Source of the DNA: Hydrolagus colliei
Taxonomy: Eukaryota
Assembly: GCA_035084275.1 (NCBI GenBank)
Contig: CM068746.1
Coordinates: 12,710,001-12,774,000 of the forward strand
Direction of reading: 5' to 3'
Length of the DNA stretch: 64,000 bases
Shown here: one piece after another, positions 5,087-37,560 of the stretch
Numbering within the stretch: position 1 is the stretch's first letter
Layout: every line of letters starts with the position of its first letter
Program-made: the position numbers and the translations under genes
The notes under the pieces: model-generated
Told to the model about the DNA's origin: nothing
The model's database searches: none
Seen by the model: only the letters and a program-made list of their open reading frames with translations

Positions 5087-5446
5087 CAAGTCAACTGGCT
5101 CATCAGACTTTGCAGCAGTTTTATGCTCTTACCACATTGAAAGGAGACAATGTGACATTGAGTAGTCTGTACCAAGAACCTTATTTAGAAAGGTTTACAG
5201 TGAAATGGTATTTCCTGTCTGATACCCTGAACTCCACCGAGAACATCGCAACATTATCATCTGAAAGTAGTTTGGTGAACAACTCTCACTATGCTGTCGG
5301 GCACGCTGTCACGAATAAAAGATTTACTCTGCAAATCAAGGATGTTCAAGTCAGTGACAGGGGAGAGTATTACTGTAGGTTGTTGGTAACCCTACCACCT
5401 CCGACAGTTACGAAAATGGGAACAAGAACGAGGCTGAATGTGACCG
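5087..5446 (+). CDS. Exon: Ig V domain with J-like G strand
   Basis: ttccctccag acceptor, phase 1-1. Encodes VTLSSLY...VKWY...FTLQIKDVQVSDRGEYYC...KMGTRTRLNVT; donor gtaatt. Confidence 0.9.
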
Positions 5447-16510: not shown

Positions 16511-16814
16511 AATGGCGAAGGACATTAATTCAGACTTCAGACTACATAAAAATAAGTGGCATTTTGTGGCTGTAAGTGTTATTTTTGTGTGTGAGAGAGT
16601 TAGAAGCCAGATTATCACTGCTTCTATAATTATCACAGCAGTGATAATCTGGCTTCTAACTAACAGTCAGACTGTCTGTCTCTCTCTTTTCTATTGTAAT
16701 AGATCTCATTTACAAGTGGACATCACATGCTACTTTCAAGCAAGAAATGGAGGAGAATAAATCTCTAGATTTTGTTTTTGGTGTGTGTGTGTGTTCTATT
16801 TTGTGTTTAGAGAT

Positions 16815-17310
16815 GGAGGGAGAGAAGGAGAGGGGGAAAGTTGCGAGAGGAGGAGAGGGAGGGAGAGAATGAGAGGGGGAAAGGAGGAAGAGAAGGAGAG
16901 AGGGAAGGGAGGGAGGGAGGGAGAGAAGGAGATGGTGAAAGGAGGGAGAGAAGAAGTGAGGAGAGGGAGGGAGGGAGAGAAGGAGAGGGGGAAAGGAGGG
17001 AGAGAAGGAGAGAGGAAGAGAGGAGAGGGAGGGAGAGAAGGAGAGGGGGAAAGGAGGGAGAGAAGGAGCGAGGGGAAAGGAGGGAGAGAAGGAGAGAGGG
17101 GAGGGAGGGAGGGAGAGAAGGAGAGAGGGGAGAGAGGGACGGAGGGAGGGAGAGAGGGGAGGGAGGGAGAGACGGAGAGGGGGAAAGGAGGGAGAGGAGA
17201 CAGGGAGGAGGGGGAGGAGAAAGGGAGAGTGGAGGGGGAGGGAGAGAAGGAGAGGGGAAAGGAGGGAGAGAAGGAGAGAGGAGAGGAGGGAGAGAAGGAG
17301 AGGGGGAGGT
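16815..17310. repeat. GA-rich low-complexity tandem repeat inside the hAT element
   Basis: Recurrent gggagagaaggagagggg-type units; source of several spurious E/G/R- and P/S/L-rich ORFs. Confidence 0.95.
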
Positions 17311-17615
17311 AGAGAGCAAACAACATCGTATAATTCAACAGACCTTGACACCAACATTACAAACTTTCTGGACCTAGAGCACGCATTTCGAAATGTGCGT
17401 GCACCGCGACTGCGCGCGCATCGTCAGTGCGGACGCATCGTCAATGCGCGCGCACCGCGACTGAGCGCGCACCATGAATGCACGCGCACTTCGAATGCAC
17501 GCGCATGCGCAGTATAAAAACTCGATAGATCGGTTTAAGCAGGTATGAGCAAACCGATATATCCATATCCGGAAAAATCCCATATCGCCGTTCCCTAGTA
17601 TCCCATATCTCTGGA

Positions 17616-17940
17616 TTATTTAGCTATGGCAAGCCAGTCAAGCTTGCGTTGCACAATCTGAATCCTTTGTTTTATTTTATCAATCTTTCTCTCTGTTGTT
17701 TGATTGGTTATGGAGATCGTCTCATCTTCAAGATCTTTCAAGATGGCTTGCAGAATATTTGTCAGCCATTCCCTGTCATACTGCCCATAATCGGAGACCA
17801 GCTGGGTGACTTGTTTTTCAACCTGATCGACAAGATCTTCATCATCTGCAATCTTCACAATGATCTTCAAGTCGGTTCGAAGCTCTTTCACTCGCTGGAT
17901 TTTTCTCCGGCCATTTTCACTGAAATTGTTCCCACATAAA
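17616..17940 (-). CDS. Terminal exon: last LRR plus ~85-aa helical extension
   Basis: tttctcag acceptor, phase 2. Encodes LCGNNFSENGRRKIQRVKELRTDLKII...RKLDWLAIAK*. Confidence 0.85.
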
Positions 17941-20900
17941 CTGAGAAACACATTAAAAGGGACAGGCTTAAGAAATGAAAAGTCAACGGTGACCTTAGCT
18001 CCAATATAAGGCATAGATACTCAATGTGAAGTGTATTTGCTAGATTTACTGTTTGTGACAGGCAAAGTATGGAAATTAGAGGTCTACTTAACATTGCTTG
18101 ATGGTTGCTAATAATAAAGGAATAATTTAGTATAGTGCCTTTCATGTCAGGAGGAAGACCCAAAGAATATATATAGGATTTACAGTAAAAGCCTGTTTAT
18201 CCGGCACCCTTGGGACCGGCCAATACTGGTTAAAGTGCCTGCTGGATATTCGGGCGGCCTGCGGCCGAAAACCCAACACAAGAAAATTAAAATTATTTTA
18301 ACACACACCATACAGATCAGACTAAATAATAACAGATCATAGAATATTGTATGGGTACGTATTGTTAAAACTTCTCACCTTTACTGATTGAGGTTTACAG
18401 TCCAGCAATTCTTTTTTAAATGGAGGACTCCAAGCGGGTGATTTTAAAGTCACGCAACATTACTAGCGGCAAGCCGATAGCCCTAGACTCTACTAGCGGC
18501 AAACCGAAATACTGCGCGACAATGTGGGTTATCGGCTAGCGTTATCGGCTTGTCGTTAGGATGACTTTAAAGTCGCACTCCATTTTTTTCACCCACTTGG
18601 TGAGCTCCATTTTAAAAAGAATCACTGGACTATAAGCCTCAACCGCAGCATCATGGCTTCAAGTGCAGCATCTACCAGCAAAGGTGAAAAGCGCAAGAGA
18701 GTAGTTTTAACAATAAGTACCAATACAATATTGTTATTATGTTATTATTTATGCATTTACAAATGCTCACCGCTATTGTTCTGGATAAATTCCGGTTTAT
18801 CGAATGGGGACTTTTTTTTTGGCGTGACGGTTATATGGAAGTGCCGGTTCATCGAGTCAAGGATAAACGGGCTTCTACTGTACTGTGAAGTGGAGTGACT
18901 ATTTGTCGGCAAATGCAGCAGGCCATTTGAGTACACCAGCCTCCCAGACACAGCCAGGGAGTGAATGATCAATTTTATTTGGGAGATTCTTGGCCAGGAC
19001 ACAGGGAGAAACTGCTTTTCTTTTTTCAAATAGCCCAATGGGAATTTATCATTCACCAGAGCAGAGAGACCTTGGTTTAAGGTCTCATCTGAAGAATGGT
19101 ATCTCCGTAATACAACACACCCCAGCTCTGCATTGGAATGGTATCTTGAACACAAACCTTCTGACTCAGACGAGAGTACTATCAACTTCAGGCTGGCAAG
19201 CTTGCAATTATATCTGGGATTTCGCTAACATTTAGAAAATTGATTGCAGACTTACTGTAGTATTTCAAGAGTCTTGTTGTGCTTCAGACATGCGGGCATT
19301 GTCTCTAACACTTCATCTGTAATCCCGTTGTCATACAAATAAAGGATCTTCAGACTCTGGTTTATCTTAAGTGCTTTCAATATTATCTGAGCCCCGCTGG
19401 ATTGAAGGTTATTTGTTCCAATTCTATAAAGAATGAATGAACAAACAGGGATGATATAAACAACAAACAAACAAAACTTACATTTATATAGCGCCTTTCA
19501 CGTCGAGAGGACGTCCCAAGGCGCTGTACAGTCAGGTAGGACAAGAGCAGGGTGGGAAGGATCAGGGCAGGATGAAGAATAGTAGGAAAAGTAACTGTAT
19601 ATTAGTGGGCGAAACGTGGCAGCCAAATTGCGCACAGCAGTGTCCCACAATCAGTCACGGAAGTGGGACTAGGGGCAAAAGGGGGTAAAGAAGCAAAAGG
19701 GGAGGGGTCGAGGCAGGGGGAAGAAAAGCAGGACAGTCGACTGTATACTTGTGGGCGAAACGCGGCAGCCAAATTGCGCACAGCAGTGTCCCCACAAACA
19801 ATCGCGAAAATGGGGCCAGGGGAGAAAGGGGGAAAAGAGGGTAAGGGGGGAGAGGGAGGGAAAGGTGGGATGGGTTAGGGTTAGGGAGGAAGAGGGGGGG
19901 AGAAAGGGGGGTAAGGAAGAGAGGGAGGGAAAGATGGGTGGGGGCAAGATCAGGAAGAGGGAAGAGGGAGGGAAGGGGAAAAGGGAGGAGAGAAAGTGGG
20001 GAAAGGGAGTGAGGGAAGAAGAAGATGGGGGCAGGGGTGGGGGGGAATCAAACAACAATAATAAACAACAAAAGCAATAATATTAACAACAAAAACAGCA
20101 ACAAACAACAACCAACAATCGTCCAGCAACCACTCCTTGTCCTCGCCGTCCGCCAGGATGATCCCTGAGATGGCGGGAAAAAAGGGCCCAGTGTGGTGTC
20201 AGGCCCCAAAACCAACCGGCTCCTCAGTCAGTGAACCCGGGGACTCGGTGATGGCCCTGGCACCTCGGACATGGTGTGTCTGGCCGGCTCGCACAGCAGC
20301 AGCAGCAGCCCGATCGCCGGCTGGATCTCCCGCGACGAGATGATCCGTCGCTTGCAGCACCTGGGCGCTCTCCCCCTCGCGGAAGACGTGCGCCATCCGC
20401 TGCCAGAGGAAAGTGCCGAGGTCGCGGCCTTCCTAGGTCCTGTCGAGGGGCCACTCTTCGCACAGCCGGAGGAAGCGCCGACAGCGAATGGCCGCCATTC
20501 CCTCCGTGATACTCCCCGTCGTCCCAAAAAGATGGCTTCGTTAGCCGGCTGCCCATAGAGGAAGAACCGGCAGCGATGGAAGCCGGCTCCAGCTGGTGGG
20601 CTGAGCGGTGCATAGCGTGAAAGCTCTGTCCCCGCGATCGTTCCAGCCCGAAGATCTCTAGTCTCGGGAGCGGGTGGTCCCGTGTGAAAAAAAATATCAC
20701 TATATATCTAATATCACTATTAGATAAAATAGATGATATAAACTATCATCTATCGCCAGGGAGGTGGGCGAGGTGGAGAGAGTGCAGGTGCAGGTGCTAT
20801 CCTGCACTCTCTCCACCTCACAGCCATCTTGATTTAGAGGGTATTCGACCGGGAGAGTTGAAAAGAGTAATGGGATTGGGGAAAGCTAAGCAAAGTCAAA

Positions 20901-23900
20901 GTGGGAAGGCATGGTAGCCTTTTTTAAAAAAAATTGGTATCTTTCAGAATTTTCCCTTCGTAATTCATAGACATATTGCAAAAGTATTTAGAAACTTACG
21001 ATAATTTTTCAAGAGGACAACTTGATTCTTGAAGAATGTTGCTGATTATCCTGGCGGACTTTACACTCAGCTTGTTGGAACTTACTCTGTAAAATGGAGA
21101 TTAAGAACACTTGAGTAAGTCTGTATTAAATTACCATTTAAAATCACAGGATTATCAAGAGATTTGGTTGAATACTGATATTCCTATTTGTAACATCAAA
21201 CTGATTCTGATATGAGGACATGGCAAAAACCACTATTCCTGGTAACACATCCCAATTGTTGGTTATCCAGTTTTCATTTTGCTGTCTGTCCTTAACTTGT
21301 CCTCCCATAGAGCATAGTCACAAATTGATTGAGTAAACAGCAATAATTTCTGTTTATATAGCGCCACTTATGGAGAGTGGAATCACAGAGCGCTTGACAG
21401 TGGTGGAGCACCTCACTGACCTCAGGTGATAAACTCTTTCTGATATGACAGCCTGTTCTTCATTCTAATCTAATGCATATACATTATCTCACACTGATGT
21501 TTCAATGGAAACCCAAAGAGAACTATTCCATTACCCATGGAGAACGTAATAGCATTACTTACAAGATAGATTTACATTTGGAAATTACTTCCTCGAGTTG
21601 CTGAATGCCTTCATCCTTCAAGTCGCAAAGTCTTAAGTCCATTTCTTGCATGTGGGAATGACTGAGACAATAGCACAGCGCTGCAATGTCCAGGGGGCTC
21701 AGAGAAATGTTGCAAAAGTTTATGCTTGTAATGTGAGGAGACACTTCTTCTGTCACTTTATTATCGTGCAGTTCGAAAAGGCAATGGATTAAATTTAGTT
21801 GCTCAGAATGCTTGATACCTGATTGATACCAGTCTGTAAACCACACGATCAGCGCTTGATAAGTAGAATCACTGAGGGGAGCTGAAGACTTCCAGAGGTT
21901 TCCATCTCGTCCTGCCGTTAAGAAGCCCATGAACATTTTGGTGAAACTGAAGAGTTTCTTCTTGAGCTCAGGCCACTTGACTGCTTCAATACACAACAGG
22001 CTCTTTGGGTTCTGTGGCTTCTTTCCCAGACACCACAGATCCAGGCATTCGATCAGCTCTTCGGGTTTGTCCTTCAGTAAGTCTGCACAATACCAGGCTG
22101 CTATCTGCTCCATCAGTATAGGATGATAGAACTCAAAGCTGCTCTGATTGTCCCATTTCTTTTCCAAGATGAGATTGGACAAGTCACTGAAAAGAAATGT
22201 TGGCCTTATATCAAATTCAATAAGATCTTTCTCTTCCATGTTGTGTTTGCCTGACAAGAGATGATGATAGGAAAGCTTCCCCACTTTTAGGATGGTCGTA
22301 ACAATTTTTTCATGGGGTCTAACCTCACATTTCTCAATATCAGTCACTGACAGTTTGTGTGACTGTGCAGTGCCTGGAGAACCATGACTAAAGAGGCTGT
22401 TAAAGAACAGAGTGAAGAGTTTGCTCTGAGTTATTGGCACAGCTGTTATCTTTTCAGAGTCATGATTGCACATCTTGAGAGCATTGCACAGCATATAGCT
22501 GTTTAAGGGATTGGAGGCCAGGTATGTGATGGTCTCTTTCTCAGTAAAATGTTGATACATTTTGCTTGCTGTTTCCTTATCTTGATAGAACACATCGCAG
22601 TATTGTCGTAGCTGATCAGTAGTAAACCCAGAAATTGCCAGGATGCAATCAAAATATTTCTTGTTTGTTTCTACCTGATCATTATTCCACCGGGAGGTCA
22701 CCAATACGGTTGCAGTAGGAAGCAGTTGCCCAGAAATCAGATTGGACACAAGAACACCGACATTAGCCTCAGTGTCTATGTTGATATGCTTCAATGGAGC
22801 CTTACAATCGATTTGATAGTAGAACTCATCCAGGCCATCCAAAATGATCAACACATCATGGCGATCAAAGAGGAGTTCATTCAGGACTTCTGATAGTGGA
22901 GAGCACTTGCTCTGAAGCAGTTTCCTTAGGGTTGTCTCTTCTTCAACCTTATTTAAATCATGGAATCGTAAAATAATGATGCACTTGAAAGGTTGATTGT
23001 TTGATTCAGATGCCCATTCTTGCCTCATGTAGGTAACTGTCCAGCTCTTGCCCACGCCTGCATCTCCAATCATGAAGATACGTTTTGAAGAGGAATTTTC
23101 TCCCACAGCCATGGAGAGCATTTTAATTGGTTCGATTTCTTTTCTATTATCTGAACCACCTTCATTAATCCCCTCAATAGGTTTTCCTTCCTTCTTTGGG
23201 TAACTGACATTCACTGTCCTCATAAGAGACCTGTAACATTCGGCCATTTTACCACTGATCATATCAGGATACTTTTCTATAAGGCACTGTTTGTAGACTT
23301 GAAGAGCATCTGAAGAGGAAAGAACTAATATTTTATTTTGTGGCTCTTGTATTTTCTGAGCATTTCAGAGTTATGTGCAATTTGGACAATTTTTAAATTC
23401 AATCTTAATTTATAAACTGATTTTCTATAGATTTTTGCGTGAACAATGCATTTAAAAATTGATATTGGATGCTCTGAATTGCTAAGAAAATAGAATAAAT
23501 CTAGAACCAGATGGAATTTCTTCCCTCTGGTCTTCATTTGACCAAAATATTTTGTTATTCCCCAAACCAACATCCTAGAGATTCTCGGAGGCTGCGCCTT
23601 TTAACAACAACAACAGAATTACATTTGTGGGGACTCAAAATATTAAAGAGGTAGGAGGGGGCAGGGCCATGGAGGGCCTTGAAGTTAAGGACAAGTATCT
23701 TGAATTCGATGCTCAGAGGAAAGCGGAGCCAGTGGAGCTGGGCAAGGGTTGGGATGATGGGGTTGCGGAGCCTGGTGTGGGTGCGGTCTGAGGGGTGAGG
23801 CAGTGACGGAGATGGCTGATGTTGCGGAGGTGGTGGAAGGTGGTGCTGGTCATGGCATGGATATGGGGGTAAAAGAATAGCTCAGGGTCAAACAAGATAT

Positions 23901-26900
23901 CCAACTTCCTGACAGGCTTGGTGAGGTGAAGTGTGCATCCGTGGATGCTGATGCTGCCGGCACCTGAGGTGCGGAGGAGCTGGCATGAGTGAATCAGGAT
24001 GGTCTTGGTTTTGCTGATGTTCAGCTGTAGAATGTTTTCTTTCATCCAGGATTTGATGTCTGACAAGGTGGTCTGTCAGTACAGCAGTAGTCCTGGAATT
24101 GAGGGTGGAGGCAGCGAGGTAGAGTTGGGTGTCATCCGCATACATGTGAAAATTTACCGCATGTCTGCGGATGATGCCACCGAGGGGGAGCATGTAGAGG
24201 TACAAGAGGAGGGGAACAAGAGGACAGAGACACGAGAAGGTGAGTTGGCTGGAAAATAAACCATTGATAGAGGCAAAGTGGAGATGGTGCAAGAAGTAGG
24301 ACCTGAACCATTCAAGGACAGAACCTTGAAGGTTGAGGTGAGAGGAGAGGAGGTGAAGGAGGATTAAGTGGTCGAAAGTGTTGACGATGGCAGAGAGATC
24401 GATGAGGATTAGGAGCATTAGTCACAGATGAACAGGATGTAATTTGTGACTTTAACCGGAGCAGTTTCCATGCTGTGAGCAGCAATGAAACCTGATTGAA
24501 GAGGTTCATGGAGGGAGTGGGAGGAGAGGAAAGAGCGAAGCTGCGAAGCAAGAACTCTTTCAAGGACCTTGGAAAGAAAGGGTAGGTTGGAGATGGGCTG
24601 GTAATTGGAGAGCAGGGATGTGTCCAGGGAAAGTTTCTTGAGGATGGGGGTTATTGTGGTTATTGAGGTGGGTGGAAAGGGTACCGGATTAAAGGGAGAG
24701 ATTGATGGTGTCGGAGATTAGGAGGGCGAGGAGATGGAGCTGGGAGGTAAGCAGAAGCGTGGGAATAGGGTCAAGGGAGCAGGTGATGGGCTTCCTGGAG
24801 GATATAGTGTTATGACAGAGGAGGGGAGACAAGTTGGAAAGGAGTTGAAGGAGATGAAGTGGTGATCAGAGATGACCTTGTTGGTGATGACATCCAAGAC
24901 ACCGAGGCCCCGGGTGATCACCTGGTTGAGTGGATGTAGATGGAGAGGTTGAGAAAGAAGGGGAGGGAGGAGACCGAGGAGATAGAGCAAGAGGGGGTGA
25001 AGTGAAAGTTGAGGATGAGGAGGTGATTGGAACAGAGGCAGCGGGAAGAGATATTGGAGATGAAGGTGGGGGAGGTTTTTGCGGGGCGATAAACAGGGAG
25101 AATTTTGAAAGGAAAATTAGAGAGGTGGCAGAGAGAAAGGTGCTCAAATGAGGGGAGTGAGCCAGAAGAGTAGGGGGATAGAGCGAGCGATGTTCTGGAG
25201 ATGATAGTAACACCACTGCCATGGCAGTTGGAGGTGGGTTGATGAGAGGTATAGCCGGGTGTGTGGTCTCAGTGATGGTTTAGGTATCGCCTAGGGTAAT
25301 TCCGGTTTCAGTGAGGGCCACATGTCGGTGTTTTCGTCAAGGATGAGGTTGTGGATGGTCAGAGCCTTGTTGCAGAGGAGGCAGACATTTTGAAGGCCGG
25401 TGCGGAGGGAACGGTTTCCATGGGAACATGAGAAATGAAGGGTTGATGGAGTGGTTCGCAGAGAGGGTGGGGATATGAGTGAGAGAGGACAGGTTAGCCC
25501 CCGGAGTCTGGATCCGGCCGGGCTTGCAGCGGAAGTGGGGCATGGGGCAGCCAGTGTGGCTGATTCTGGACAGCCAATGCTGAGAACCATGGTGAGCCTG
25601 GAGGAGGATTCCCAGACTGGAGCAGAGGGAGGCAGTGGAAGGGTCAAGTGGGGATAGGAGGCGAGGAGGACAGAGAGATAGGAGGACAGAGCGATAGGAG
25701 GACAGAGCAAGAGAGTTGCAGGGAGGGGAGCATTTTGAAGGGGACGGTAGCTCAGGTCGGAGGCAGCAGCCAAAATGCGCAAGCCAAGGCAGCAGTCAGC
25801 CCACAGACCTGAAGGGGCTAGAGGTAGTACAGAGGGGAGAGGGGAGAGGGGGCAGGGCATTCAGTGTGATTATCCACCTGGTTACCCAACCTGGAAGATA
25901 GCACTGAACACCCTGCATGGAGAGTGCAGAAGAAGGGAAGGAGACACAGTGAGCTATACAATACCTGGTACCAGGAATTCAAACCTGGCTGGTGGAACTG
26001 AGGCACAGAGATGTTTGGGCGGGAAAATCTAAAATGGCTCTCCCTGAAGCCGGTAAAAACCAGCACACGTGACCCGTGTCCCCCTCTAGGTACCAGCCAG
26101 CCCGAACCCCAGCCCTGCCTCTAGCTATCTGCCAGTTCAGATCCTGAGAACCCTGCCCTGCCTCTATCTACCTGCTGGTCCCGAACCCCAAAACCCAGCC
26201 TTGCCTCTATTCAACCTGCCGATAGTCCTTAAGGTAGGTTCTGGCTATGTTATTTGCTCTTGTTGAGTTGTGGTGGTTGATTCAGTGGTTTTACCTTTAC
26301 GAGACTTATACGTCCTCCCAGCATCTTGGGACACCCATCTGAGGCTGTTGTTGTTATTGTAAATCGTATAATGGCCTGAGATGTACATCCAGCCGAGCAC
26401 CATTGAGTTTTCTATCAAAACTACTTCATTTCATTGCACTAGTCAAATTAATCATCTCCTAACTCATAAATGGTCCCCTATCCTCCATTACTCTGCTAGC
26501 CTCCATTACTCCTGCACTTACCGTCTGCAGTGTAGATTAATGATTAAATCAGTTGGATACAATTTATACAAGTTTGCCTGCCACGCGGACATTGCGTAAG
26601 TCATATTAAATGCTATGTTCCCGACTGATACAATTATGAGAGTTTTTCTGTATTTAATTGCAAATAAAGCCCCTGACCTTATGCTCCCGCCCAACCACAC
26701 TTGTCTAACCTTATATAGTGTATGCACATGCTGCATCCCACAGCATTGAATGGATAACATCAACATCAACAGCAACAAAATTACATTTCTAGAGCGCCTT
26801 TTACGTTGGAAGAACGTCCCAAGGCCCTGAACAGTCAGGTCGGGACCCGAGCAAGCGGTGGGGGGGCAGGCTAGGGGAGAGGGGAGGGAGAGAGTTGGGA

Positions 26901-29900
26901 GGGGCAGGAGAGATTTAGGAGGGGACAGAGATGGGAGTGCAGCAAAAGGCATGATTGAACAAGAAGGTCTTGAGACCGGCCTTGAAGGAGGTGAGGGAGG
27001 GAGCGAGGCGAAGGGACTGTGGGATGGAGTTCCAGAGTGTGAGGGCAGAGAGGCTGAAAGCCCATTCACTGATGATAGGACGGGTCGGGCGGGGTACACC
27101 TGGCAATAATGCATTAAGTTAGCAAACATTATACATTTTAAAGGCATTCAAAGGGAGGAGCAGAAGCCTAGGGCAGTAATAATTGAGGCAGAAACCAAGG
27201 TGAAGGTGGAAAGCAACAATTGCATTTGATGATACTCGGTGCACAATTCTACAGTAACACAGTCCCAAATCCAAACTGCAGCAACCAGGCAAGTTTAGTT
27301 TGGTTTTCTATTCCTGGGGGAAAACGGGCATCTTTTATTATAATTAGTTGCAGATATTGTCCTGGAATTAATACAGCAATCACTAATCTCAGCTCATTAC
27401 CTGCCATGGTTATGATGCTCATCAAAGTCACTTCTGGAAAAACAAAATACAATATACAAATCAATTAGTGGCGGTTTGTTTTGGTGAACAAACAAGTGAG
27501 GGCAAGTGATATTAGATTGAGTTTGTGCGCAATTGGCTGCCGTGTTTCACCCACAAAATATCCAGTCAATTCACTTTACAGTGTATTCTGTGAAGTGCTT
27601 TAAGAGTCTCGAAGACGTATAATGCGCTATATCAACTGCATTAGTTATTTAGAACTTCCCCAAATGAAATGATTGTGTATGTGTGGTGGGGGTGGGGAGA
27701 GAGAGCAAGGGAATCCAAAAATAGTAGAGATCTCTAAGGGGGGAGCCAGCAGCATAGATATGATGGGCTAATTTCTGCGCTGAAATTTCTATGAAAGTCA
27801 GAGACATAATCAAATAACAATAGCAACTGAGATCAAAATCGAGAAGAATATGGAAAGCAGTAGGAATTGCGGCTGATTTTCTCCTCTTTTCCCAAACCAG
27901 ACTAACTGTAGACCAGAATGGATAACTCAGCATAGACCAATACTGAAATCTAAAAGAGAGGGCAAGTTTGATGGATTGGGGAGAGTTTAAAAGATTCAGG
28001 GCGTAGTGGCTGAAAGTGCAGCTGCTGATGGAGGAGGCAGCAGATGGGGGGAATCTGCGATAGTGTGGTGGTGTGACAAAGTTTAGGGTGGGTGATCGAG
28101 TACTTGTTGATCATATTCAAACTTACTCTCAGGATCCAAATAAAGCTGCTTTTTCATTATTGATTTTCTGAAGACAATCCCCATCCCGATCCCAAACACC
28201 ATAATGGCACCAAATGCTGCAGCAATTCCCAATCTAGTTCTTCTGATATGTAACGCTGAAATCCGATCTTCAGGGTTGTTGATTTCATTGACTTGTGAAG
28301 TATCTGTATTTGGAAGTTTGAATTAACTATAAATCAATGACAGCACGTTTTCTTCCTAAAAGCAGTACCTTGCTTTCCACAATGCAGGTTGTATAAATCA
28401 ATAATCAGCTGAGGAAACGTGTATCTTTTGTAGCATCAAAAGTTTACTTGCACAAGCCTTTTCAACATTCTGTGTTAGAGAGGGCCTCAGATGTGCGAAG
28501 CAGTTGTTTGCAGTTAATTTGTGAGGCTGTTGGCTCCAGGAATGTCAGAAATTACCTGAAAAACCAGCACCTGGCAACACTTAATATTAAGTTCATTTAG
28601 GCTGAAGTCTGTACTTCCACTGTTTTCCGGAGTGGCCGGATAGTGTCTGGACCTGTGTGGGTCCAGAGATGCCTTGCCATTACTATAAAAACAATTAATT
28701 ATTAATTGAACAAGATCACAGGAGAGGTTCATGTGAAGAAAGCGCTTCAAACCATTTGACCTCAGCTTTGTGGAGTCCTGTAGCTCAGTGGTTAGAGTAC
28801 TTGCCTTGCAAGCGAAATATCTAGTTTCAATTTCAGTCAGGGCAAAACCTTGGGCAAGTTTCCTTCCTCTACAGGCCTGATAATAATAACCCCTCAAAAA
28901 AGAAACTACTGTAATTTGGTCACTTCATCCACAATTGTTTGTGGGCTGCTGCTGCATTTCGCCCATAAATATAGTCAATTCAGTTTACAGGATATTCTGT
29001 GAAGTGCTTTGAGACGTCTAGAAGATATGAAAAGTGCTATATCAAATGCAAGGATTATTATTACAGTATTATTAAACTTCCTGACTTGTGATTGCACAGA
29101 TGTGGTGACTACGTGACATGCACTGTGGTACAATTGCTAAATGTCTGGTTTTGTCATACAGAAATATTGACACTGACTTCCTGTGCTGCATCCTGCTGAC
29201 TTACAAGCCACAGAAACCAGAACAGAATCTCTCCAGCATCTGACTTGGGGAGAGCTTGATGCGAATGCAATCTTGGGAGACAAGGCCAACAGTCTTATGG
29301 AATGCTAGCCTGTGGTTTATCTTGATAGCTTGAGAGGGGTCCACTCAATGTGACCTAATGCTTGTGTTTGTTACAGAGAAGCAGAGTATTTGGTTCTGCC
29401 CAACACAGCCCTGTGACTCTGGGTATAATGGGACTAACAATGATTCAATAGCTAACTATATATATATTTATATATATATATTTATAAAACTGTGTATATA
29501 TATGTACACATATATAAATCTCGTAATGTCATAACCAATAGCCCTCCAGCTAACTTAGTCAATCATCTCATGACTGTGTAGGATCATACTGTGCACAAAA
29601 TGGCTGCCACAATTCCCCACAGAAATTACTACACATGACAGTCATTACTGTGACGCACTTAGTGACATATTAGCATGATAGACATAAATTGTTTAAGATA
29701 CTTCTATAAATTGCAAGTTTGTCTTCCAACTAGCCTTGTTTGTAAGGATATGTGTCCTCTCTGACTTGCATGTGTTATGTCTGTATTACGGAGATAATTC
29801 TGTCTTGGGTATTTTACTGCTAATGTACTGGTTCTCTGAAATGGTCACTCTGTACAGTGTGATTCACACATGTGCATCTACATACTACCCACTTATCTTA

Positions 29901-32527
29901 CATCTCATATTTCTTGAATTATTCGCAGAATGTGTTCTGATGTGTTGGACTGGAATTATATTTGTATAGCGTCTTCAAATTTTATCTGTTCTTCCTCAAT
30001 TCTCTACTTCCTCATTTACAGCTGTAATGTGGTAATATTCCACCTCAGTCTAGGTTTAATTTATTGACAAAACTTCTCAGAGTATCTAGAATTGATTAAT
30101 TCAGTCTTAACTTTGGTGCTTTTTCTCGTAGTTCTTAAAAACCCTTTCTATTGTATGACACAACCTTCCTCCCTGTCACATGGAGCAAAAATTCGCATTC
30201 TTGCAAATAACTCACTGGAAACCTACAAAAGGGAATATACCCACTGATTATGTAGGTGCACAAACTACAGCAAATGGCAGACATCTACTCCCAACCCACA
30301 CCGACCCCACCAAAAAAATCAGAATTTTTCAGAGCCTTTTAGTGTTTGCTCCTCTTGACCAGCTCTAGATCCCCAGCCCACCCCACCATCGAGGGTTGGG
30401 CCTTCAGCCTATCTGCTGCCACTCTTTGAAACTCCCTCCCATGGTCCATTTGCCTCGCTCACTCGCTTGATTCCTTGAAGGTTCGTCTCAATACCCTCCT
30501 ATTACTGTTTTTGCTACAAGAATTCTAAATACCTACCAAGTACTTTGAGTTCTACCACAATTTGGACATGATCATAATCATCATGTTGAATGACGTAACA
30601 TGTGTATTTCCCATTATCTGATAAAATCAGCGTCTTCAGCTGAAGAGAAGCATTTCCATTTAGCATAACGCTGGGGAGTAGCTGTGTTCTTCCTCTGAAT
30701 AACTGGTTCTGATACTCTGGATGGTCAACATTATTGTAGAAACTGTGAACAACTGTATCGTCCTCTGTCCTCTGCCAGGTGATGACCAGTTTCTCAGGTT
30801 CGAGATAGGATTCTGGTGTAAAGAGACAGGGTAGCAACACATCTCTGCCGACGACTCCAGATATCATATACAAAGACACCTCCCCTAAAAGAGTTACAAG
30901 TTGATATAGTTAATTACAAAGCTAGAATCATATTTAGTTTACAGCAGTGAAAGATGACATCCACCCACCATGTTTTTGCTCTCCATTGAAGCTGTATTGT
31001 AATAGATGCATAGGAGTAGGAGGAAGCCATTCAGCCCCTCAAGGCCTGTTTCATCATTCTATATGATCATGGCTGATCTGTACCTCAACTCCAATTAACC
31101 CGCTTTTGACCCATATTTCTTGATACCCTTACCTAACAAATATCTATCCACCTCAGTCTTGAGGATGTGAATGGATCCAGCCATAATCAACAACCTTTTG
31201 AGGGAGGAAGAGTTCCAGATTCCCACTAACCTTTGGGTGAAAAATTGCCCAAGAGGAAATCCCATTAATTATTAAGAAATACTGCTATTTAATTACCAAG
31301 TATATTTAAATAGATGTATACTTGGTGTATATTGTTGTAGTTTGGGATTGATATTACAGCAATACAGCTATTCCTACTATACATCATAGCTTAATTACTT
31401 TTACATTCTGGAAAGCACTTTGAGATGACTCAACAACATGTTAAGGCGCTCTATCAAATGCAAGGATTACTATTATTGGTGTTTACTTCCGTATCACGGT
31501 GAATGAAACATTAGTTCCTAATCATGGAACCTAGAATTCCCATAATCACTGGATACTCAGCCGTTAAAGTATTAACTTGCAATTATCAAAACAGAAGGTA
31601 TTTTTCAGATTTGTAACCCCTTATAGAACTGTACTGCAGGGAAATAGGCTGTTTGGCCAAATTAATCCATGCCGATGTACATTCTATATCAATCTCTCAC
31701 TACTCCTTATCCCCTGGCACACCCTTCTGTTCCTTTCTCCCTTATGTGTGTATCTAGCTTCCTCTTCAATGCATTTGTACCATCTGCTTCTACCACTGTT
31801 CATAACTACCATAGTTATACATCTATGCTTCTGTGACTTTTTTTAAAAAGTTGCCATTTTTATTAATCTCACTTTCCCCATATTCCTTAAAATTTACTCC
31901 ACTTACCCCATTCCATAGAATCCATGATTCTATCGGGTTGGCCTGAATAGCTTGTAACTAATCTCACACCCCAAAATCTCTCTCGGTGAAGAAATTCCTT
32001 GTAACTTCTCCCCTGATTTCTCTGTTAACAATCCTGAGACTGTAATCACTAGTCAGTGATTCTTCAACTAAAGGAAATATTTTTCCTATTTATTTTGTCT
32101 TGTTTCATAATTTTAAACAACTCTATTAAATCCTCTCTCAACCTCCTCTGGTCCAATGAGAAAGCTTCAGTTTAATGAGCCTCTCATTATACGTATAGTG
32201 TTCCATATGATCCTGTAAATCTATGCCGCATCCTACACGTCTTCATAATATTCTTCCTGGGATGCTTAAAACTGAACTTGGAGCTTGTAAATACATATGC
32301 TCACCATTCTATGGACAAAACTACATGGAAAATGTTGATTAATGTACTGTTTGGATGGATTTTACTGGTGAAGCATTGATAACAATTATTAACAGTGACA
32401 TGTCTCTGGCTTGCCAGGATATGGCCAGTCAATTAAATAAATAGAAATGGGATATCACACAGACAGACCCACAGTATTAAGGAGCACACTCACCAAACAA
32501 AGGGAACATCAATACTGTGAGTAACAT
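17616..32527 (-). CDS. Predicted type I membrane Ig-NLR receptor: signal peptide - B7-type IgV - TM - NACHT - LRR - helical tail (~961 aa)
   Basis: Exons 32527-32494, 30884-30537, 28303-28127, [optional 27433-27401], 23309-21563, 21086-21000, 19423-19256, 17940-17616. All junctions are GT-AG with matching phases (1,1,1,2,2,2); 2886 nt = 962 codons including the stop. The TM-to-NACHT junction is inferred. Confidence 0.72.
18183..18880 (+). mobile_element. TcMar-Tigger/pogo-like MITE in the last intron of the NLR gene
   Basis: TA-flanked TIRs cagtaaaagcctgtttatcc / ggataaacgggcttctactg. Retains the transposase start MASSAASTSKGEKRKRVVLTI and an internal inverted repeat (~18388-18430 vs ~18604-18645). 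Confidence 0.85.
19256..19423 (-). CDS. LRR exon (two 28-aa RI-type repeats)
   Basis: 168 nt, phase 2-2: IGTNNLQSSGAQIILKALKINQSLKILYLYDNGITDEVLETMPACLKHNKTLEIL. Confidence 0.92.
21000..21086 (-). CDS. LRR exon (one 29-aa repeat)
   Basis: 87 nt, ttttacag acceptor, gtaagt donor, phase 2-2: VSSNKLSVKSARIISNILQESSCPLEKL. Confidence 0.9.
21563..23309 (-). CDS. NACHT exon (NLRC3/NLRP-like): pre-NACHT helix, NBD, HD1, WHD, HD2, first LRRs
   Basis: Walker A GDAGVGKS, Walker B LIILDGLDEF, sensor-1 LVTSR, WHD FEFYH, LNLIHCLFEL. Strong acceptor ttctttcctcttcag in phase 1; the frame is open upstream of the listed Met; donor gtaagt in phase 2. Confidence 0.95.
23603..26240 (-). mobile_element. Long degenerate L2 LINE in the intron before the NACHT exon
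   Basis: Endonuclease-like (LQNVCLLCNKALTIHNLILDEN) and RT ([11 protein letters not shown]) fragments, (TTG)n 3' tail, tandem repeats at ~26090-26220. Confidence 0.9.
28127..28303 (-). CDS. Stalk + transmembrane + juxtamembrane exon
   Basis: ccaaatacag acceptor, gtaagt donor, 177 nt, phase 1-1: DTSQVNEINNPEDRISALHIRRTR-LGIAAAFGAIMVFGIGMGIVF-RKSIMKKQLYLDPE. Not present in the supplied ORF track. Confidence 0.88.
30537..30884 (-). CDS. IgV exon of B7/butyrophilin type (HHLA2/CD276-like)
   Basis: 348 nt, phase 1-1: DVLLPCLF...VITWQR...VVHSFY...FRGRTQL...GNASLQL...SDNGKYTCYV; both canonical Cys and the Trp are present. Confidence 0.93.
32494..32527 (-). CDS. Leader exon (signal peptide)
   Basis: Exon 32562-32494 with ttttctacag acceptor and gtgagt donor. 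ATG at 32527 gives MLLTVLMFPLF+G in phase 1, continuing GEVSLYMISG. Confidence 0.78.
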
Positions 32528-33025
32528 TTTGTTTAAAGGAAATTCCTTCTTTCTTGGGAGTTCTGTAGAAAAGAGGATGAAAAGGGGTTACTAGTATACA
32601 ATGGCTAAATCTGATTTTCATCAAAGAAAATTATGAATATGATGCAGTCAGTGAGTGTGGAATCACACAGCAGTTCTGAAACATACTTGCAGGATGAGCT
32701 GAAGAATCTGAAACAGTAAATCATTACCAATAAATGATGATGGGGATATAAATCTTGATCTGGTCTTGAATTTTTTGATGCAAGGATTATTAATACTATA
32801 TTCACACTATGTTTTGTAGTAACTTAGGTCTAGCAGCCAATCAATGTTTTGAAGAAAGCAATGTTTCACACAAACCTTGTAACAGGAAACCAATGTCAGT
32901 TGAACTTTCTGATACAAACTACCCACAATAACTATCAGCTCTTTGTCTAAACCCACAGTTTGTTTACAACTAGTAGACTGTATGGTGGGCACTCACATTA
33001 GCTGTTGAACACCCTCACATGTATA

Positions 33026-36276: not shown

Positions 36277-37560
36277 TTCAACAACAACAACTTTGATTTA
36301 TGTAGCGCCCTCCATGCCGGACGGCGTCTCAGAGCGCTTCACAATAAAGGATCCCGGGCCTGAGCCAGGGGGAGGGGGGAAAAGGTGACCGAAGGCGCGG
36401 TCGAAAAGAAAGGTCTTCAGCTGAGACCTGAAACTAGGAAGAGAGGGGGCGAGGTGAAGGGAGTGAGCAAGGGAATTCAGAGCCTCGGGGCGTAGTGGCT
36501 TAAGGTACTGCTGCCGTTAGTGGAGCGGAGGATTTGGGGGACACGTAGGAGGCCAGACCCGGTGGAGTGAAGGCAACGAGTGAAGGTGCTGTGTTGGGAA
36601 GAAAGGAGGTCAGAGAGGTAGTGGGGTGCAGGGAACTGGAGAAATTTGAAAACAAGAGTGAGCATCTTGAAATTGATCCTCTCCAGGACAGGGAGCCAGT
36701 GAAGTCTGGCAAGGACTGGGGTAATGGGGGAGCAAAGCGTGATGCGGGTGAGAACGCAGACGGCAGAGTTCTGAATGAGCTGGATTTTATGGATTGTGGT
36801 GGAGGGGAGATCGGCGAGGAGGGCATTGGAATAGTCCAGCCGAGAGGTGACAAAGGCATGGACCGCGGTGAGTTTCAGCGGCGTTTGGGGCAAGGTATTG
36901 CCAGAGACGGGCAATACATTGCAGGTGGAAAAAAGCAGTGTTGGTGAGGGACCGGATGTGGGGGAGGAAGGACAGTTGGGGGTTGAACCTGATGTCAAGG
37001 ATGCGTACCGGTTTGGAGAGTTTCAGGGTCAGGTCGGGTAGATGGAGCAGGTGAGAGCCGTGTGACTGAAGACAATGACGAGAGCCAAAGAGTATGGTTT
37101 CCGTCTTATCGACATTCAGCTGCAGGAAATTTGCGCTCATCCAGCTCCTGATGTCTGACAAGCAGGCCGTTAGAACATCAGGGGACTGGGGGTCGCAAAG
37201 TGAGGTGGAAAAATACAGTTAGATGTCATCAGCATACATGTGGAAGTGTGCCCCATGACTGTAGATGTCTGCAAGAGGGAGCATGTAGATGAGGAAGAGG
37301 AGGGGGCCAAGGATGGATCCTTGGGGTACCCCACAGGTAACCAGGTGAGAGTGGGAGGAAAGCCATTTGTGGTGATGCATTGCTGGCTGTTTGTGAGATA
37401 CAACTCGAACCAGGCGAGTGCGGTCCCACTGAAATGAATGACGGAGGATAGGCGGTGGAGGAGGATGGTGTGGTTGACAGTGTTGAACTCGGCTGAGAGG
37501 TCCAGGAGAATATTCCCCCCACCCCACACCCACTGCTTATTTTCCCTCCTCCCCTGGAGG
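36277..37560 (-). mobile_element. L2 LINE, second subfamily tail
   Basis: GVPQGSILGPLLFLIYM, HMYADDI and [11 protein letters not shown] motifs; tail ...ctgagacgccgtccggcatggagggcgctac...(TTG)n. Confidence 0.92.

What the first reader, a model, noticed from the sequence alone, without database searches (positions are those of the whole stretch)
23100..30884. Possible inside-out danger display: a butyrophilin-like design with an NLR in place of B30.2
Seen: the TM (LGIAAAFGAIMVFGIGMGIVF) is Gly/Ala-rich with a GxxxG (GIGMG) and is followed by a basic stop-transfer. About 90 residues separate it from Walker A. Walker A/B, sensor-1 and the WHD His are intact. Known: BTN3A1 senses cytosolic phosphoantigen through B30.2 and changes its ectodomain for gamma-delta T cells; NACHT domains form ring oligomers on activation; GxxxG motifs favour helix pairing. 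Inference: cytosolic ligand sensing could cluster the B7-like IgV into a multivalent surface patch for T/NK cells. The reverse is also possible, with an extracellular ligand nucleating the NACHT ring.
Basis: inference. Interest (0 to 1): 0.7.

Follow-up and report, generated by a model that had tools for sequence, protein, structure and literature searches.

The report
Membrane-anchored NLR with B7-like ectodomain
The flagged stretch is the front half of an intact gene for an immune sensor (NLR) that, unlike the cytosolic NLRs of mammals, is anchored in a membrane and carries a B7-H3-like immunoglobulin domain on the other side; the family is old, widespread in non-mammalian jawed vertebrates and, as far as I could find, unstudied.

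Summary
On the minus strand lies an intact gene of 8 coding exons (32527..17616, 972 aa): leader, B7-H3-like IgV, stalk, one TM helix, basic stop-transfer, 106-residue linker, NACHT with intact Walker A/B, sensor-1 and WHD His, about six LRRs and a 3-helix tail.

The fusion is real. All junctions are GT-AG and phase-compatible. Full-length relatives exist in chimaera, sharks, rays, gar, lungfish, all three amphibian orders and alligator. Two intronless RNA-derived contigs carry the whole ORF.

The family is a monophyletic NLR clade outside NOD1/2, NLRC3, NLRC5 and the NLRP-like groups. No member scanned has CARD, PYD, FISNA or B30.2. IgV, NBD and LRR are the constrained parts. The TM sequence is not, and GxxxG occurs in only 8 of 22 members. 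A conserved acidic dileucine motif after the TM (28 of 35 members) suggests adaptor-driven cycling between surface and endosomes.

The direction of signalling is untested. Inside-out clustering fits NLR domain logic slightly better than an outside-in receptor. I found no paper on this vertebrate family; the nearest precedent is sea-cucumber AjNLRC4.

The parts
32728..32806 (-). Putative 5' non-coding exon. The donor is ATTG|gtaatg at 32728/32727. The exon start is unknown.
   Evidence: Homologous to the first exon of Callorhinchus isoform X1 (FKTRSRF(I/L)SPSS). In the window it has an in-frame TAG and no ATG, so it cannot start the protein.
32494..32562 (-). Leader exon: acceptor ttctacag|AA, ATG at 32527, MLLTVLMFPLF/G, phase-1 donor TTTG|gtgagt.
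   Evidence: It aligns with the leaders of relatives (MEFPLNKTFTILIFSLFG in Callorhinchus). It is the second of only two hydrophobic segments in the protein.
30537..30884 (-). IgV exon (residues 12-127), phase 1-1. It carries Cys31/Cys107, Trp48, the GNASL sequon (N89) and DxGxYxC.
   Evidence: Pfam V-set E 4.5e-12. Best PDB relatives are CD276, VTCN1, MOG, BTN3A1 and PD-L1. The Cys residues are invariant in the family. omega is 0.32 against Callorhinchus.
28127..28303 (-). Stalk + TM + stop-transfer exon (residues 128-186), phase 1-1. Stalk DTSQVNEINNPEDRISALHIRRTR; TM helix at 28170..28232; RKSIMKKQ at 28146..28169.
   Evidence: Splice sites. The stalk is homologous to Callorhinchus. Hydropathy. 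The relative is predicted as a helix in the AF2 model. omega is 1.55.
27401..27433 (-). 33-nt mini-exon (KVTLMSIITMA), phase 1-1. Together with the last codons of the TM exon it encodes the acidic dileucine-type motif EKVTLM (28130..27420).
   Evidence: Same exon and same splice sites as in Callorhinchus. [DE]xxxL[LI] occurs in 28 of 35 family members against 2.1 expected from shuffles. Using this exon restores the conserved Asp at the NACHT-exon junction.
21563..23309 (-). Large exon: pre-NACHT helices, NACHT NBD (Walker A 23044..23067, Walker B 22825..22854, sensor-1 22690..22707), HD1-WHD (His motif 22090..22137), HD2 and the first LRRs.
   Evidence: Pfam NACHT 1e-20, NLRC4_HD2 6e-8, NOD2_WH 1.3e-4, LRR_6. 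PDB sequence hits to NOD2, NLRP9 and NLRP3. Motif coordinates. omega is 0.28 for the NBD.
21000..21086 (-). LRR exon (29 codons), phase 2-2.
   Evidence: tblastn with the Callorhinchus protein.
19256..19423 (-). LRR exon (56 codons), phase 2-2.
17616..17940 (-). Last exon: final LRR, conserved C-terminal three-helix tail (17619..17846) and the TAA stop.
   Evidence: AF2 predicts three helices, with pLDDT about 73-89. There is no significant fold match. The tail is conserved across the family.

Best explanation
What it is (high confidence, about 0.95). The region is the 5' half of an intact gene, probably in a chimaera other than Callorhinchus milii. The gene encodes a 972-aa single-pass type I membrane NLR. 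Its parts run in this order: a short cleavable leader; one B7-H3/B7-H4/BTN-type IgV on the extracellular or luminal side; a 24-residue stalk; a TM helix; a basic stop-transfer; a linker with an acidic dileucine sorting motif; then cytosolic NACHT-WHD-HD2, about six LRRs and a three-helix tail. It belongs to an ancient, monophyletic NLR subfamily of jawed vertebrates in which the IgV-TM module sits where other NLRs carry CARD, PYD or BIR.

How it most likely works (inferred, about 0.35-0.4). It acts as a membrane-tethered STAND switch that runs inside-out. The conserved cytosolic LRR holds the NACHT closed until a conserved cytosolic cue or partner binds. Nucleotide-dependent oligomerisation then pulls the N-terminal modules to the hub of the ring. 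That bundles the TM helices and clusters the IgV domains into a multivalent patch on the far side of the membrane, where a conserved counter-receptor reads them. The dileucine motif makes the protein cycle between surface and endosomes through AP adaptors. Oligomerisation could change surface residence as well as valency.

Shown here: gene structure, domain identities, conservation, phylogeny, and the absence of known effector domains. Inferred: topology, trafficking, oligomerisation and the direction of signalling.
For: - **Gene model.** Eight coding exons, all GT-AG, phases compatible, no stops.
- **Fusion.** Relatives with the same collinear V-set+TM+NACHT+LRR layout include Callorhinchus (74% identity in the search, 76% in the alignments; full coverage), 15 or more sharks and rays, salamanders and Ascaphus. 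Gar, lungfish, a caecilian, many frogs, axolotl and alligator follow. Two intronless RNA-derived contigs carry the whole ORF (L001 3341 nt, L003 3675 nt).
- **Shared exon structure.** The 33-nt mini-exon is shared with Callorhinchus.
- **Domain identities.** The IgV is nearest CD276/B7-H3. The NACHT-LRR is nearest ADP-bound NOD2 by sequence and fold.
- **Phylogeny.** The TM clade of 24 rows has SH-aLRT 100, roughly follows the species tree and lies outside NOD1/2, NLRC3, NLRC5, NLRP-like and FISNA groups. Its sister is a cytosolic CARD-bearing NLR of shad plus a Spea protein.
- **Support for inside-out.** No CARD, PYD, DD, TIR, FISNA or B30.2 occurs in any of 20 members, so the N-terminal module is the only candidate for the effector position. 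Between chondrichthyans and salamanders the IgV keeps 40-46% identity, against 38-40% for NBD, 47-48% for LRR, 17-29% for HD1-WHD and HD2, and 4-28% for stalk and TM. Against Callorhinchus, omega is 0.32 for IgV, 0.28 for NBD and 0.21 for the N-terminal LRRs. This pattern points to conserved partners on both sides of the membrane.
- **Trafficking.** [DE]xxxL[LI] lies 9-19 residues after the TM in 28 of 35 members, against 2.1 expected from shuffles.
- **Established knowledge.** NACHT oligomers gather their N-terminal domains at the hub. BTN3A1 signals inside-out. B7-family IgVs are read in trans.
Against: - No experiment or transcript from the window species was available.
- The window leader is short (12 residues), and its Met is shifted relative to other family members. 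No signal-peptide predictor was run. Both TM flanks are basic (HIRRTR / RKSIMKK), so the topology rests on the leader.
- TM sequence and GxxxG are not conserved, so specific TM packing is unlikely.
- The dileucine motif suggests that much of the protein sits in endosomes or lysosomes, where a display function makes less sense.
- In the window the motif is the weaker variant, L-M.
- The alligator relative lacks the Walker A lysine. In that lineage any function would be independent of nucleotide binding.
- The one experimentally studied Ig-TM-NACHT protein, AjNLRC4, is reported to work outside-in (PMC8699970).
- The overall omega of 0.44 is moderate.
Confidence: 0.4

Rival explanations
1. Outside-in receptor. 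The IgV binds an extracellular or luminal ligand, either a counter-receptor or a microbial surface. Ligand-induced clustering raises the local concentration and drives NACHT oligomerisation in the cytosol. The LRR and three-helix tail then act as platforms for downstream partners such as cytoskeleton, NF-kB/IFN adaptors or endocytosis.
For: This is the usual logic of type I receptors. Sea-cucumber AjNLRC4 (extracellular Ig, TM, intracellular NACHT) is reported to bind Vibrio through its Ig domains, to oligomerise and to drive actin-dependent uptake (PMC8699970; PMC13133943). The conserved dileucine motif fits a receptor that internalises with cargo. The conserved C-terminal tail could be an output domain.
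Against: No recognisable signalling domain was found in 20 members, and the tail has no significant fold match. In STAND proteins the C-terminal repeats are the sensor and autoinhibitor, and here they are cytosolic and strongly conserved. A well conserved IgV with one copy found in most species searched (several paralogs in frogs and salamanders), of a type that acts as a ligand, argues against a diversifying microbe sensor. AjNLRC4 has two TM segments and no LRR, so it is an analogue, not a relative.
Confidence: 0.3
2. Stationed cytosolic sensor. The IgV-TM module and dileucine motif serve mainly to place a conventional NLR on endosomal or phagosomal membranes. There it surveys ligands crossing, or damage to, that membrane. 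This would be an integral-membrane version of what palmitoylation does for NOD1/NOD2. The IgV would be a luminal stabilising, sorting or cis-interaction domain.
For: The acidic dileucine motif is conserved from sharks to alligator. The closest solved relative is NOD2, which needs membrane association to signal (established knowledge). The TM sequence is unconstrained, as expected for a pure anchor.
Against: A mere anchor would not need an IgV kept at 40-53% identity across the chimaera/elasmobranch and chondrichthyan/salamander splits, with omega 0.32, as constrained as the NBD. No CARD is present to recruit a RIPK2-like kinase, so the downstream step is undefined.
Confidence: 0.2
3. Annotation artefact. 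A B7-like gene (leader, IgV, TM) and a separate downstream NLR gene merely look like one gene.
For: Reading through the TM-exon donor reaches a stop after 15 codons, so a short-tailed IgV-TM protein is conceivable. Automated predictions of other Ig-TM-NLR fusions (Narcine, Cololabis) are unverified.
Against: Two intronless RNA-derived contigs (a skate relative and a salamander) encode the complete IgV-TM-NACHT-LRR ORF. Every junction is phase-compatible. The linker mini-exon is conserved. The NACHT exon begins at a strong acceptor, and its first in-frame Met lies 15 codons into the exon. The same layout is predicted independently in more than 30 species.
Confidence: 0.03

Closest known systems
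Butyrophilins BTN3A1/BTN2A1 (and the MOG/BTN branch of the B7 superfamily)
   Same: Type I layout with an N-terminal B7-type IgV carrying the (E/D)Y(R/Q)GRT..L and G(N/K)A(S/A)L motifs. One TM. A sizeable cytosolic sensor domain. An established inside-out mode for BTN3A1 (established knowledge).
   Different: No IgC exon between IgV and TM. No B30.2/PRYSPRY. Here the cytosolic part is an oligomerising NTPase with LRRs, so clustering would be nucleotide-driven and of higher order than a BTN dimer.
CD276 (B7-H3) and VTCN1 (B7-H4)
   Same: They are the best sequence matches to the IgV: E 1.5e-12 per domain with B7-H3, including LVHSF, GNASLRL and the F-strand motif. As in this family, the IgV is well conserved.
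   Different: B7-H3 and B7-H4 have IgV-IgC units and short cytoplasmic tails. The protein here has a single IgV and an NLR of about 800 residues.
NOD2/NOD1 (NLRC subfamily)
   Same: They are the closest solved NACHT-WHD-HD2-LRR by sequence (5IRL/5IRM, E 1e-27) and by fold (E 3e-29, TM-score 0.60-0.65 normalised to the target). They act at membranes (established knowledge).
   Different: NOD1/2 are peripheral, lipid-anchored cytosolic proteins with N-terminal CARDs. Here the protein is integral to the membrane and has no CARD. In the NACHT tree it lies outside the NOD1/NOD2/NLRC5 group.
Sea-cucumber AjNLRC4 (and AjNLR-new), predicted TM-NLRs of sponges
   Same: Extracellular Ig, TM and intracellular NACHT in one polypeptide. 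They are experimentally membrane-localised (PMC8699970; PMC13133943). TM-containing NLR models have been noted in sponges (PMC12909245).
   Different: AjNLRC4 has two Ig domains, two TM segments and no LRR. Homology of its Ig-TM module to this family was not tested, and an independent origin is likely. The vertebrate family keeps a full NACHT-LRR and a B7-type IgV.
NLRX1
   Same: It is an NLR whose N-terminus is a targeting signal rather than a death-fold effector. Its LRR is followed by a C-terminal three-helix bundle (established knowledge). 3UN9 is a weak match to the LRR and ranks 17th, not significantly, for the tail model.
   Different: NLRX1 targets mitochondria and has no Ig or TM. The tail similarity is not significant.

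Membership tests
NLR / NACHT-type STAND NTPases | NACHT nucleotide-binding domain with Walker A G-x4-GK[ST] and Walker B hhhhDG-x-DE | tested here: met
   Pfam NACHT E 1e-20, 74.7 bits against a cut-off of 26.7. GDAGVGKS at residues 279-286 and VLIILDGLDE at 350-359. The key residues are invariant in the family.
NLR / NACHT-type STAND NTPases | Sensor-1 Arg, winged-helix His and helical domain HD2 after the NBD | tested here: met
   VLVTSR and FEFYH are present, and His593 is invariant. NLRC4_HD2 scores 33.6 bits against a cut-off of 33.1. NOD2_WH scores 22.5 against 23.1, just under the cut-off. The fold match to NOD2 covers these domains.
NLR / NACHT-type STAND NTPases | C-terminal ribonuclease-inhibitor-type leucine-rich repeats | tested here: met
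   LRR_6 hits. The PDB alignment extends to the NOD2 and RNase-inhibitor LRRs. The AF2 model has pLDDT above 90 in this region. The exon pattern is 29/56 codons.
NLR subclasses NLRA/B/C/P (as used for vertebrates) | N-terminal AD, BIR, CARD or PYD effector domain; soluble cytosolic protein | tested here: not met
   None of these domains was found in the window protein or in 20 relatives at E<=0.05. The N-terminus is leader + IgV + TM.
NLRC3 proper (the name automated annotation gives many relatives) | Groups with NLRC3 orthologues in a NACHT phylogeny | tested here: not met
   The clade is separate from the NLRC3 row. The TM clade has SH-aLRT 100 and lies outside the group that holds NLRC3, NOD1/2, NLRC5 and the NLRP-like proteins.
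B7 / butyrophilin family | N-terminal IgV of B7 type with canonical Cys-Trp-Cys core | tested here: met
   V-set E 1.5e-10. The top PDB hits are CD276, VTCN1, MOG, BTN3A1 and PD-L1. C31, W48 and C107 are conserved.
B7 / butyrophilin family | Membrane-proximal IgC domain | tested here: not met
   No Ig-like open frame lies between 30537 and 28303 on the minus strand. Relatives also go from the IgV straight to stalk and TM. One Pleurodeles paralog has extra Ig domains.
B7 / butyrophilin family | B30.2/PRYSPRY cytoplasmic domain (butyrophilins) | tested here: not met
   No SPRY or PRY hit in the window protein or in 20 relatives.
Vertebrate IgV-TM-NACHT-LRR clade (unnamed; database names 'NLRC3-like', 'NLRP1 homolog' and others) | Collinear full-length similarity, placement inside the clade, and shared exon structure including the 33-nt linker mini-exon | tested here: met
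   Full-length collinear match to Callorhinchus: 74% identity at 100% coverage in the search and 76% in the alignments. The window protein is sister to Callorhinchus inside a clade with SH-aLRT 99-100. The mini-exon and its splice sites are shared.
Vertebrate IgV-TM-NACHT-LRR clade | Type I membrane topology (IgV outside or luminal, NACHT cytosolic) | not testable with these tools
   The topology is inferred from the leader, a single hydrophobic helix and the conserved N-glycan sequon in the IgV. It needs a protease-protection or glycosylation assay.
Echinoderm AjNLRC4-type membrane NLR | Two extracellular Ig domains, two TM segments, NACHT without LRR; sequence relatedness | tested here: not met
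   The window protein has one IgV, one TM and LRRs, unlike the description in PMC8699970.

The most novel reading that the evidence does not exclude
Jawed vertebrates ancestrally had an NLR that reports cytosolic danger directly to lymphocytes. Cytosolic ligand binding would drive NACHT oligomerisation and turn a monovalent, endocytosed B7-H3-like IgV into a stable multivalent surface patch. A conserved counter-receptor would read that patch, possibly an inhibitory or costimulatory Ig receptor such as the ITIM-bearing IgV-IgC1 gene that lies 5.8 kb away in this window. This would be a one-protein bridge between innate cytosolic sensing and B7-type co-signalling. Mammals would have lost it and partly replaced it with butyrophilins.
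Probability: 0.2. Interest if true: 0.9.

Novelty: new variant of a known kind. Interest (0 to 1): 0.72.

Why it matters
Vertebrate NLRs are taught as cytosolic proteins sorted into A/B/C/P/X classes by their N-terminal effector domain; a 2026 paper restates this and notes that TM-bearing NLRs are barely studied (PMC13133943). This gene belongs to a further, membrane-integral class with a B7-H3-like ectodomain. The class predates the split of cartilaginous and bony vertebrates. It survives in chimaeras, sharks, rays, gar, lungfish, amphibians and crocodilians. It was not seen in mammals, birds or most teleosts among the hits examined.

The family offers three things. It is a natural test of whether NACHT oligomerisation can be transmitted across a membrane, in either direction. 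It is a possible ancestral link between innate sensing and B7-type co-signalling. It is also a handle on the poorly understood B7-H3/B7-H4 branch, whose receptors are still debated. Tractable hosts exist (axolotl, Pleurodeles, gar, catshark).

If the protein proves to be only a stationed sensor, it still widens the known ways of placing NLRs on membranes.

Tried and rejected
- **First gene model.** I rejected it once the alignment showed the stalk and a 10-11-residue linker segment missing. The acceptor at 28303 and the mini-exon at 27433..27401 replace it.
- **Alternative NACHT acceptor.** An upstream in-frame acceptor for the NACHT exon (caag|ag near 23345) was considered. It was dropped in favour of the conserved mini-exon.
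- **IgC exon.** None found.
- **Upstream start codon.** The upstream exon has a stop and no ATG.
- **Tail domain.** It was folded alone and searched against the PDB. Nothing scored below E 1.
- **Effector domains.** FISNA, CARD, PYD, DD, TIR and B30.2 are absent.
- **GxxxG as a conserved packing motif.** Rejected; 8 of 22 members have it.
- **Paralog in the window.** None.
- **Conserved linkage with the neighbouring Ig gene.** The Heterodontus proteins were not on record. The 10-kb flanks of the Scyliorhinus locus had no match. Unresolved.
- **Run accessions of the two transcript contigs.** Not found in the literature, so tissue and species are unknown. The skate assignment rests on 81% identity to Rhinoraja.
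- **Literature.** Five topical searches found no description of the vertebrate family. The library lacks most subscription journals, so this is not proof.
Full report
**1. What is at the coordinates.** The window is vertebrate DNA with no N runs. It contains LINE/RT fragments and simple repeats. On the minus strand the finding's upper edge, 30884, is exactly the acceptor of an Ig exon (ttttag|GGGAGGTG), which ends at a phase-1 donor at 30537. Its translation is a V-set domain (E 4.5e-12). The quoted TM string is encoded at 28232..28170, GIGMG at 28193..28179 and the basic RKSIMKKQ at 28169..28146. A 1.75-kb exon (23309..21563) encodes NACHT (E 4.9e-21), NOD2-type WHD and NLRC4-type HD2. Walker A, Walker B, sensor-1 and the WHD His are all intact.

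**2. Gene model.** I read every junction and assembled eight coding exons:
- leader 32527..32494 (exon from 32562)
- IgV 30884..30537
- stalk/TM 28303..28127
- mini-exon 27433..27401
- NACHT exon 23309..21563
- two LRR exons, 21086..21000 and 19423..19256
- last exon 17940..17616

All junctions are GT-AG, all phases agree, and the ORF is 972 aa with no internal stop.

The TM exon begins at 28303, which adds a stalk homologous to Callorhinchus 'DTDTSQVTEDNN...'. A 33-nt exon sits between the TM and NACHT exons, with identical splice sites in Callorhinchus. Using it restores the conserved Asp of 'DA(I/L)Q.YK'. The TM-to-Walker A distance is therefore 106 residues.

The exon upstream of the leader has a stop and no ATG, so translation starts at 32527. 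The leader, MLLTVLMFPLFG, is short. Its Met lies eight residues downstream of the Met used by other family members.

**3. Is the IgV-TM-NLR fusion real?** Yes.
- (a) Phase compatibility holds across all junctions.
- (b) A search of 5.8 billion proteins returned full-length collinear relatives with V-set plus NACHT. These were Callorhinchus milii (74% identity, 100% coverage), 15 or more sharks and rays (44-53%) and salamanders (32%, 99% coverage).
- (c) A salamander query added Ascaphus.
- (d) A profile search of 1.84 billion representatives, followed by name look-ups, added spotted and alligator gar, African lungfish, a caecilian, many frogs, axolotl and both alligators. Their sequences show IgV, TM and NACHT by eye and by motif scan.
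- (e) Two contigs assembled from sequencing runs are intronless and carry the entire ORF. L001 is 3341 nt with ORF 267-3215 and is 81% identical to a skate relative. L003 is 3675 nt with ORF 134-3160 and is salamander-like. The genomic genes have seven or more introns (window; Callorhinchus), so these contigs are spliced mRNAs.

The two-genes artefact is therefore essentially excluded.

**4. Domain identities.**
- **IgV.** It is nearest CD276/B7-H3 (each of its two IgVs at E about 1.5e-12). VTCN1/B7-H4, MOG, BTN3A1-3 and PD-L1 follow. It shares LVHSF, (F/Y)RGRT and GNASL(R/Q)L. It has one N-glycan sequon (N89), which is conserved.
- **IgC.** No IgC exon exists.
- **NACHT-LRR.** It is nearest NOD2, NLRP9 and NLRP3 by sequence. 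An AlphaFold2 model of the Callorhinchus relative has mean pLDDT 73, with IgV at 80-89, LRR above 90 and a TM helix at 190-222. Its best fold match is ADP-bound NOD2 (E 2.9e-29).
- **Tail.** About 76 residues after the LRRs form three helices. There is no significant fold match. NLRX1, which also ends in a three-helix bundle (established knowledge), appears only at rank 17.
- **Effector domains.** No CARD, PYD, DD, TIR, BIR, FISNA or B30.2 is found in the window protein or in 20 relatives.

**5. Phylogeny.** In NACHT-to-HD2 trees the TM-bearing proteins form one clade (14 rows, then 24 rows; SH-aLRT 100). The window protein is sister to Callorhinchus. The branching roughly follows the species tree: chondrichthyans, gar, lungfish, then alligator and amphibians. 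The clade lies outside NOD1/2, NLRC3, NLRC5, NLRP-like and teleost FISNA groups. Its sister (SH-aLRT 95) is a cytosolic NLR of shad with a CARD-like N-terminus (judged by eye) plus a Spea protein. The IgV-TM module was thus acquired once, before the chondrichthyan/osteichthyan split. The database names (NLRC3-like, NLRP1 homolog, NOD1-like, NLRC5-like) are automated and mutually inconsistent.

**6. Constraint.** Identity between the window protein and salamander relatives, by region:

| Region | Identity |
|---|---|
| IgV | 40-46% |
| NBD | 38-40% |
| LRR | 47-48% |
| HD1-WHD | 17-21% |
| HD2 | 25-29% |
| Stalk, TM and juxtamembrane | 4-28% |

Codon alignments against Callorhinchus give dS 0.28 and an overall omega of 0.44:

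| Region | omega |
|---|---|
| IgV | 0.32 |
| NBD | 0.28 |
| N-terminal LRRs | 0.21 |
| Tail | 0.64 |
| HD2 | 0.72 |
| Stalk-TM exon | 1.55 |

The gene is under purifying selection. The ectodomain is as constrained as the ATPase. The TM is constrained only in hydrophobicity.

**7.
- GxxxG in the TM occurs in 8 of 22 members (chimaeras and most sharks). No ray or amphibian has it.
- A conserved acidic dileucine-type motif [DE]xxxL[LI] lies 9-19 residues after the TM. It is encoded across the TM-exon/mini-exon junction. Examples are EKAPLL (sharks), ERAALI (Callorhinchus), EGVPLI (gar), DEVKLL (caecilian), ELAPLL (Ascaphus), DQEALL (salamanders) and DAEKLI (alligator). The window has the variant EKVTLM. 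The motif occurs in 28 of 35 members, against 2.1 expected from shuffling the same segments. The members are related, so this is not a probability, but the surrounding linker is otherwise poorly conserved.

By established knowledge such motifs bind AP-1, AP-2 and AP-3 and drive endocytosis and endolysosomal sorting. From memory, the shark and Callorhinchus versions closely resemble the tyrosinase and LIMP-II signals. This was not tested here.

**8. Mechanism.**
- **Shown:** an intact, constrained gene for a protein with a leader, a B7-type IgV, one TM and a complete NACHT-LRR, with no known effector domain.
- **Inferred:** type I topology, nucleotide-dependent oligomerisation and adaptor-dependent trafficking.

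For direction I weigh three readings.
- **Inside-out (about 0.35-0.4).** In STAND proteins the C-terminal repeats sense and the N-terminal module is what the ring gathers. Here that module is TM+IgV. The IgV belongs to a ligand-type clade and is strongly conserved. BTN3A1 is a precedent.
- **Outside-in (about 0.3).** This is ordinary receptor logic, and AjNLRC4 is the precedent. It lacks an identifiable output domain and leaves the conserved cytosolic LRR unexplained.
- **Stationed sensor (about 0.2).** This fits the sorting motif and the NOD1/2 analogy, but not the constraint on the IgV.

The readings are not mutually exclusive. The alligator relative has lost the Walker A lysine (GNTAKIIS). 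If that gene is functional, part of the role does not need nucleotide binding.

**9. Comparison and novelty.** The protein resembles a butyrophilin in layout, B7-H3 in its ectodomain and NOD2 in its ATPase-LRR. It resembles AjNLRC4 only in the general idea. It fails the defining features of BTN (IgC, B30.2), of NLRC and NLRP (CARD, PYD) and of NLRC3 (phylogeny). It meets those of NLRs in general and of the unnamed vertebrate clade.

Five topical full-text searches found no description of this vertebrate family. The whale-shark genome paper surveys NLRs without mentioning it. The sponge and echinoderm papers treat TM-NLRs as an invertebrate curiosity. Subscription literature was not searchable, so prior description cannot be excluded. 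I rate it a new variant of a known kind, with interest 0.72.

**10. Caveats.**
- No data from the window species beyond the DNA.
- No signal-peptide or TM predictor beyond hydropathy.
- The trees used a quick search with SH-aLRT only and a distant coral root.
- Absence from mammals, birds, most teleosts and jawless fish rests only on the hit lists examined.
- The AF2 models are of the Callorhinchus relative and of the isolated tail.

Noticed in passing
window 5065..11795 (+ strand): IgV exon 5091..5447, IgC1 exon about 6421..6737, last exon about 11709..11795: A convergent neighbouring gene, about 5.8 kb from the NLR 3' end, encodes an IgV-IgC1 protein. The IgV is weakly PD-1/CTLA-4/TCR-V-like (E 2e-5) and has an LPPP FG loop. 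The last exon carries two ITIM-like motifs (NICYAQL, IVYSQV). Relatives exist in Callorhinchus ('Ig heavy chain Mem5-like'), in Heterodontus (on a contig of the same length as the one carrying its NLR relative) and in a transcript contig. It is a candidate inhibitory receptor. Any link to the B7-like NLR is pure speculation.
   Followed up: partly
P0123 (Carettochelys), P0024 (Cololabis), P0022/P0023 (Narcine); Other predicted proteins join a B7-H3-like IgV ectodomain and a TM to different cytosolic immune NTPases. The turtle protein has 2x IgV, a TM and 2x IRG-type GTPase. The saury protein has three Ig-like domains, a TM and PYD-FISNA-NACHT-LRR. The electric-ray protein has IgV-IgC1, a TM and (CARD)-NACHT. 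The ray and saury proteins fall outside the clade studied here. They may be independent fusions or mis-joined neighbouring genes; no transcript check was made.
   Followed up: partly
P0299 Alligator mississippiensis relative: The only amniote members found, in the alligators, keep IgV, TM, the dileucine motif and Walker B. Walker A, however, reads GNTAKIIS, so the lysine and a glycine are lost. This suggests a nucleotide-independent role or a decaying gene.
   Followed up: partly
window 30537..23309 (-); P0007 Stegostoma isoform X2, P0008 Pristiophorus: The IgV, stalk-TM and mini exons are each phase 1-1, so skipping any of them keeps the frame. A zebra-shark model lacks the TM exon. A sawshark paralog model lacks the IgV but keeps stalk and TM. 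Whether such isoforms are real is unknown.
   Followed up: no
window 28251..28233 (-), residues 146-151 HIRRTR: A basic cluster lies just outside the membrane. It is RRTR in the window, RR in Callorhinchus, ERQR/ERKK in rays and RRSWSRR in salamanders. It could be a convertase or shedding site, or merely a lipid-facing charge. It also makes the charge balance across the TM ambiguous.
   Followed up: no
window 16155..16760 (+): An ORF with a BED zinc finger (Pfam zf-BED, E 2.2e-8) lies between the two Ig-related genes. It is probably derived from a hAT-type transposon.
   Followed up: partly
window 23700..25900 (-), 830..2120 (-), 36480..37600 (-), 51630..52220 (+): These are LINE-type reverse-transcriptase fragments. 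1286..2119 matches RVT_1 at E 1.4e-6, just under Pfam's cut-off; the others are recognised by similarity of their tails. One lies inside the long intron between the mini-exon and the NACHT exon. A short SINE-like unit (...CAQ.AAAF.PQ..S..FT.YSV..FE...) recurs many times on both strands.
   Followed up: no
window 16710..17380 and 19660..20080 (both strands): Simple-sequence tracts give long S/P/L-rich and G/E/R-rich open frames in the introns and 3' flank of the NLR gene. They are not coding.
   Followed up: no
P0163/P0308 (Alosa), P0157 (Spea); The closest relatives without a TM are a shad NLR whose N-terminus looks like a CARD by eye (not scanned) and a spadefoot-toad NLR. They share the NACHT-LRR and a similar acidic helical tail. 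They may show what the ancestor looked like before the IgV-TM module was acquired.
   Followed up: partly
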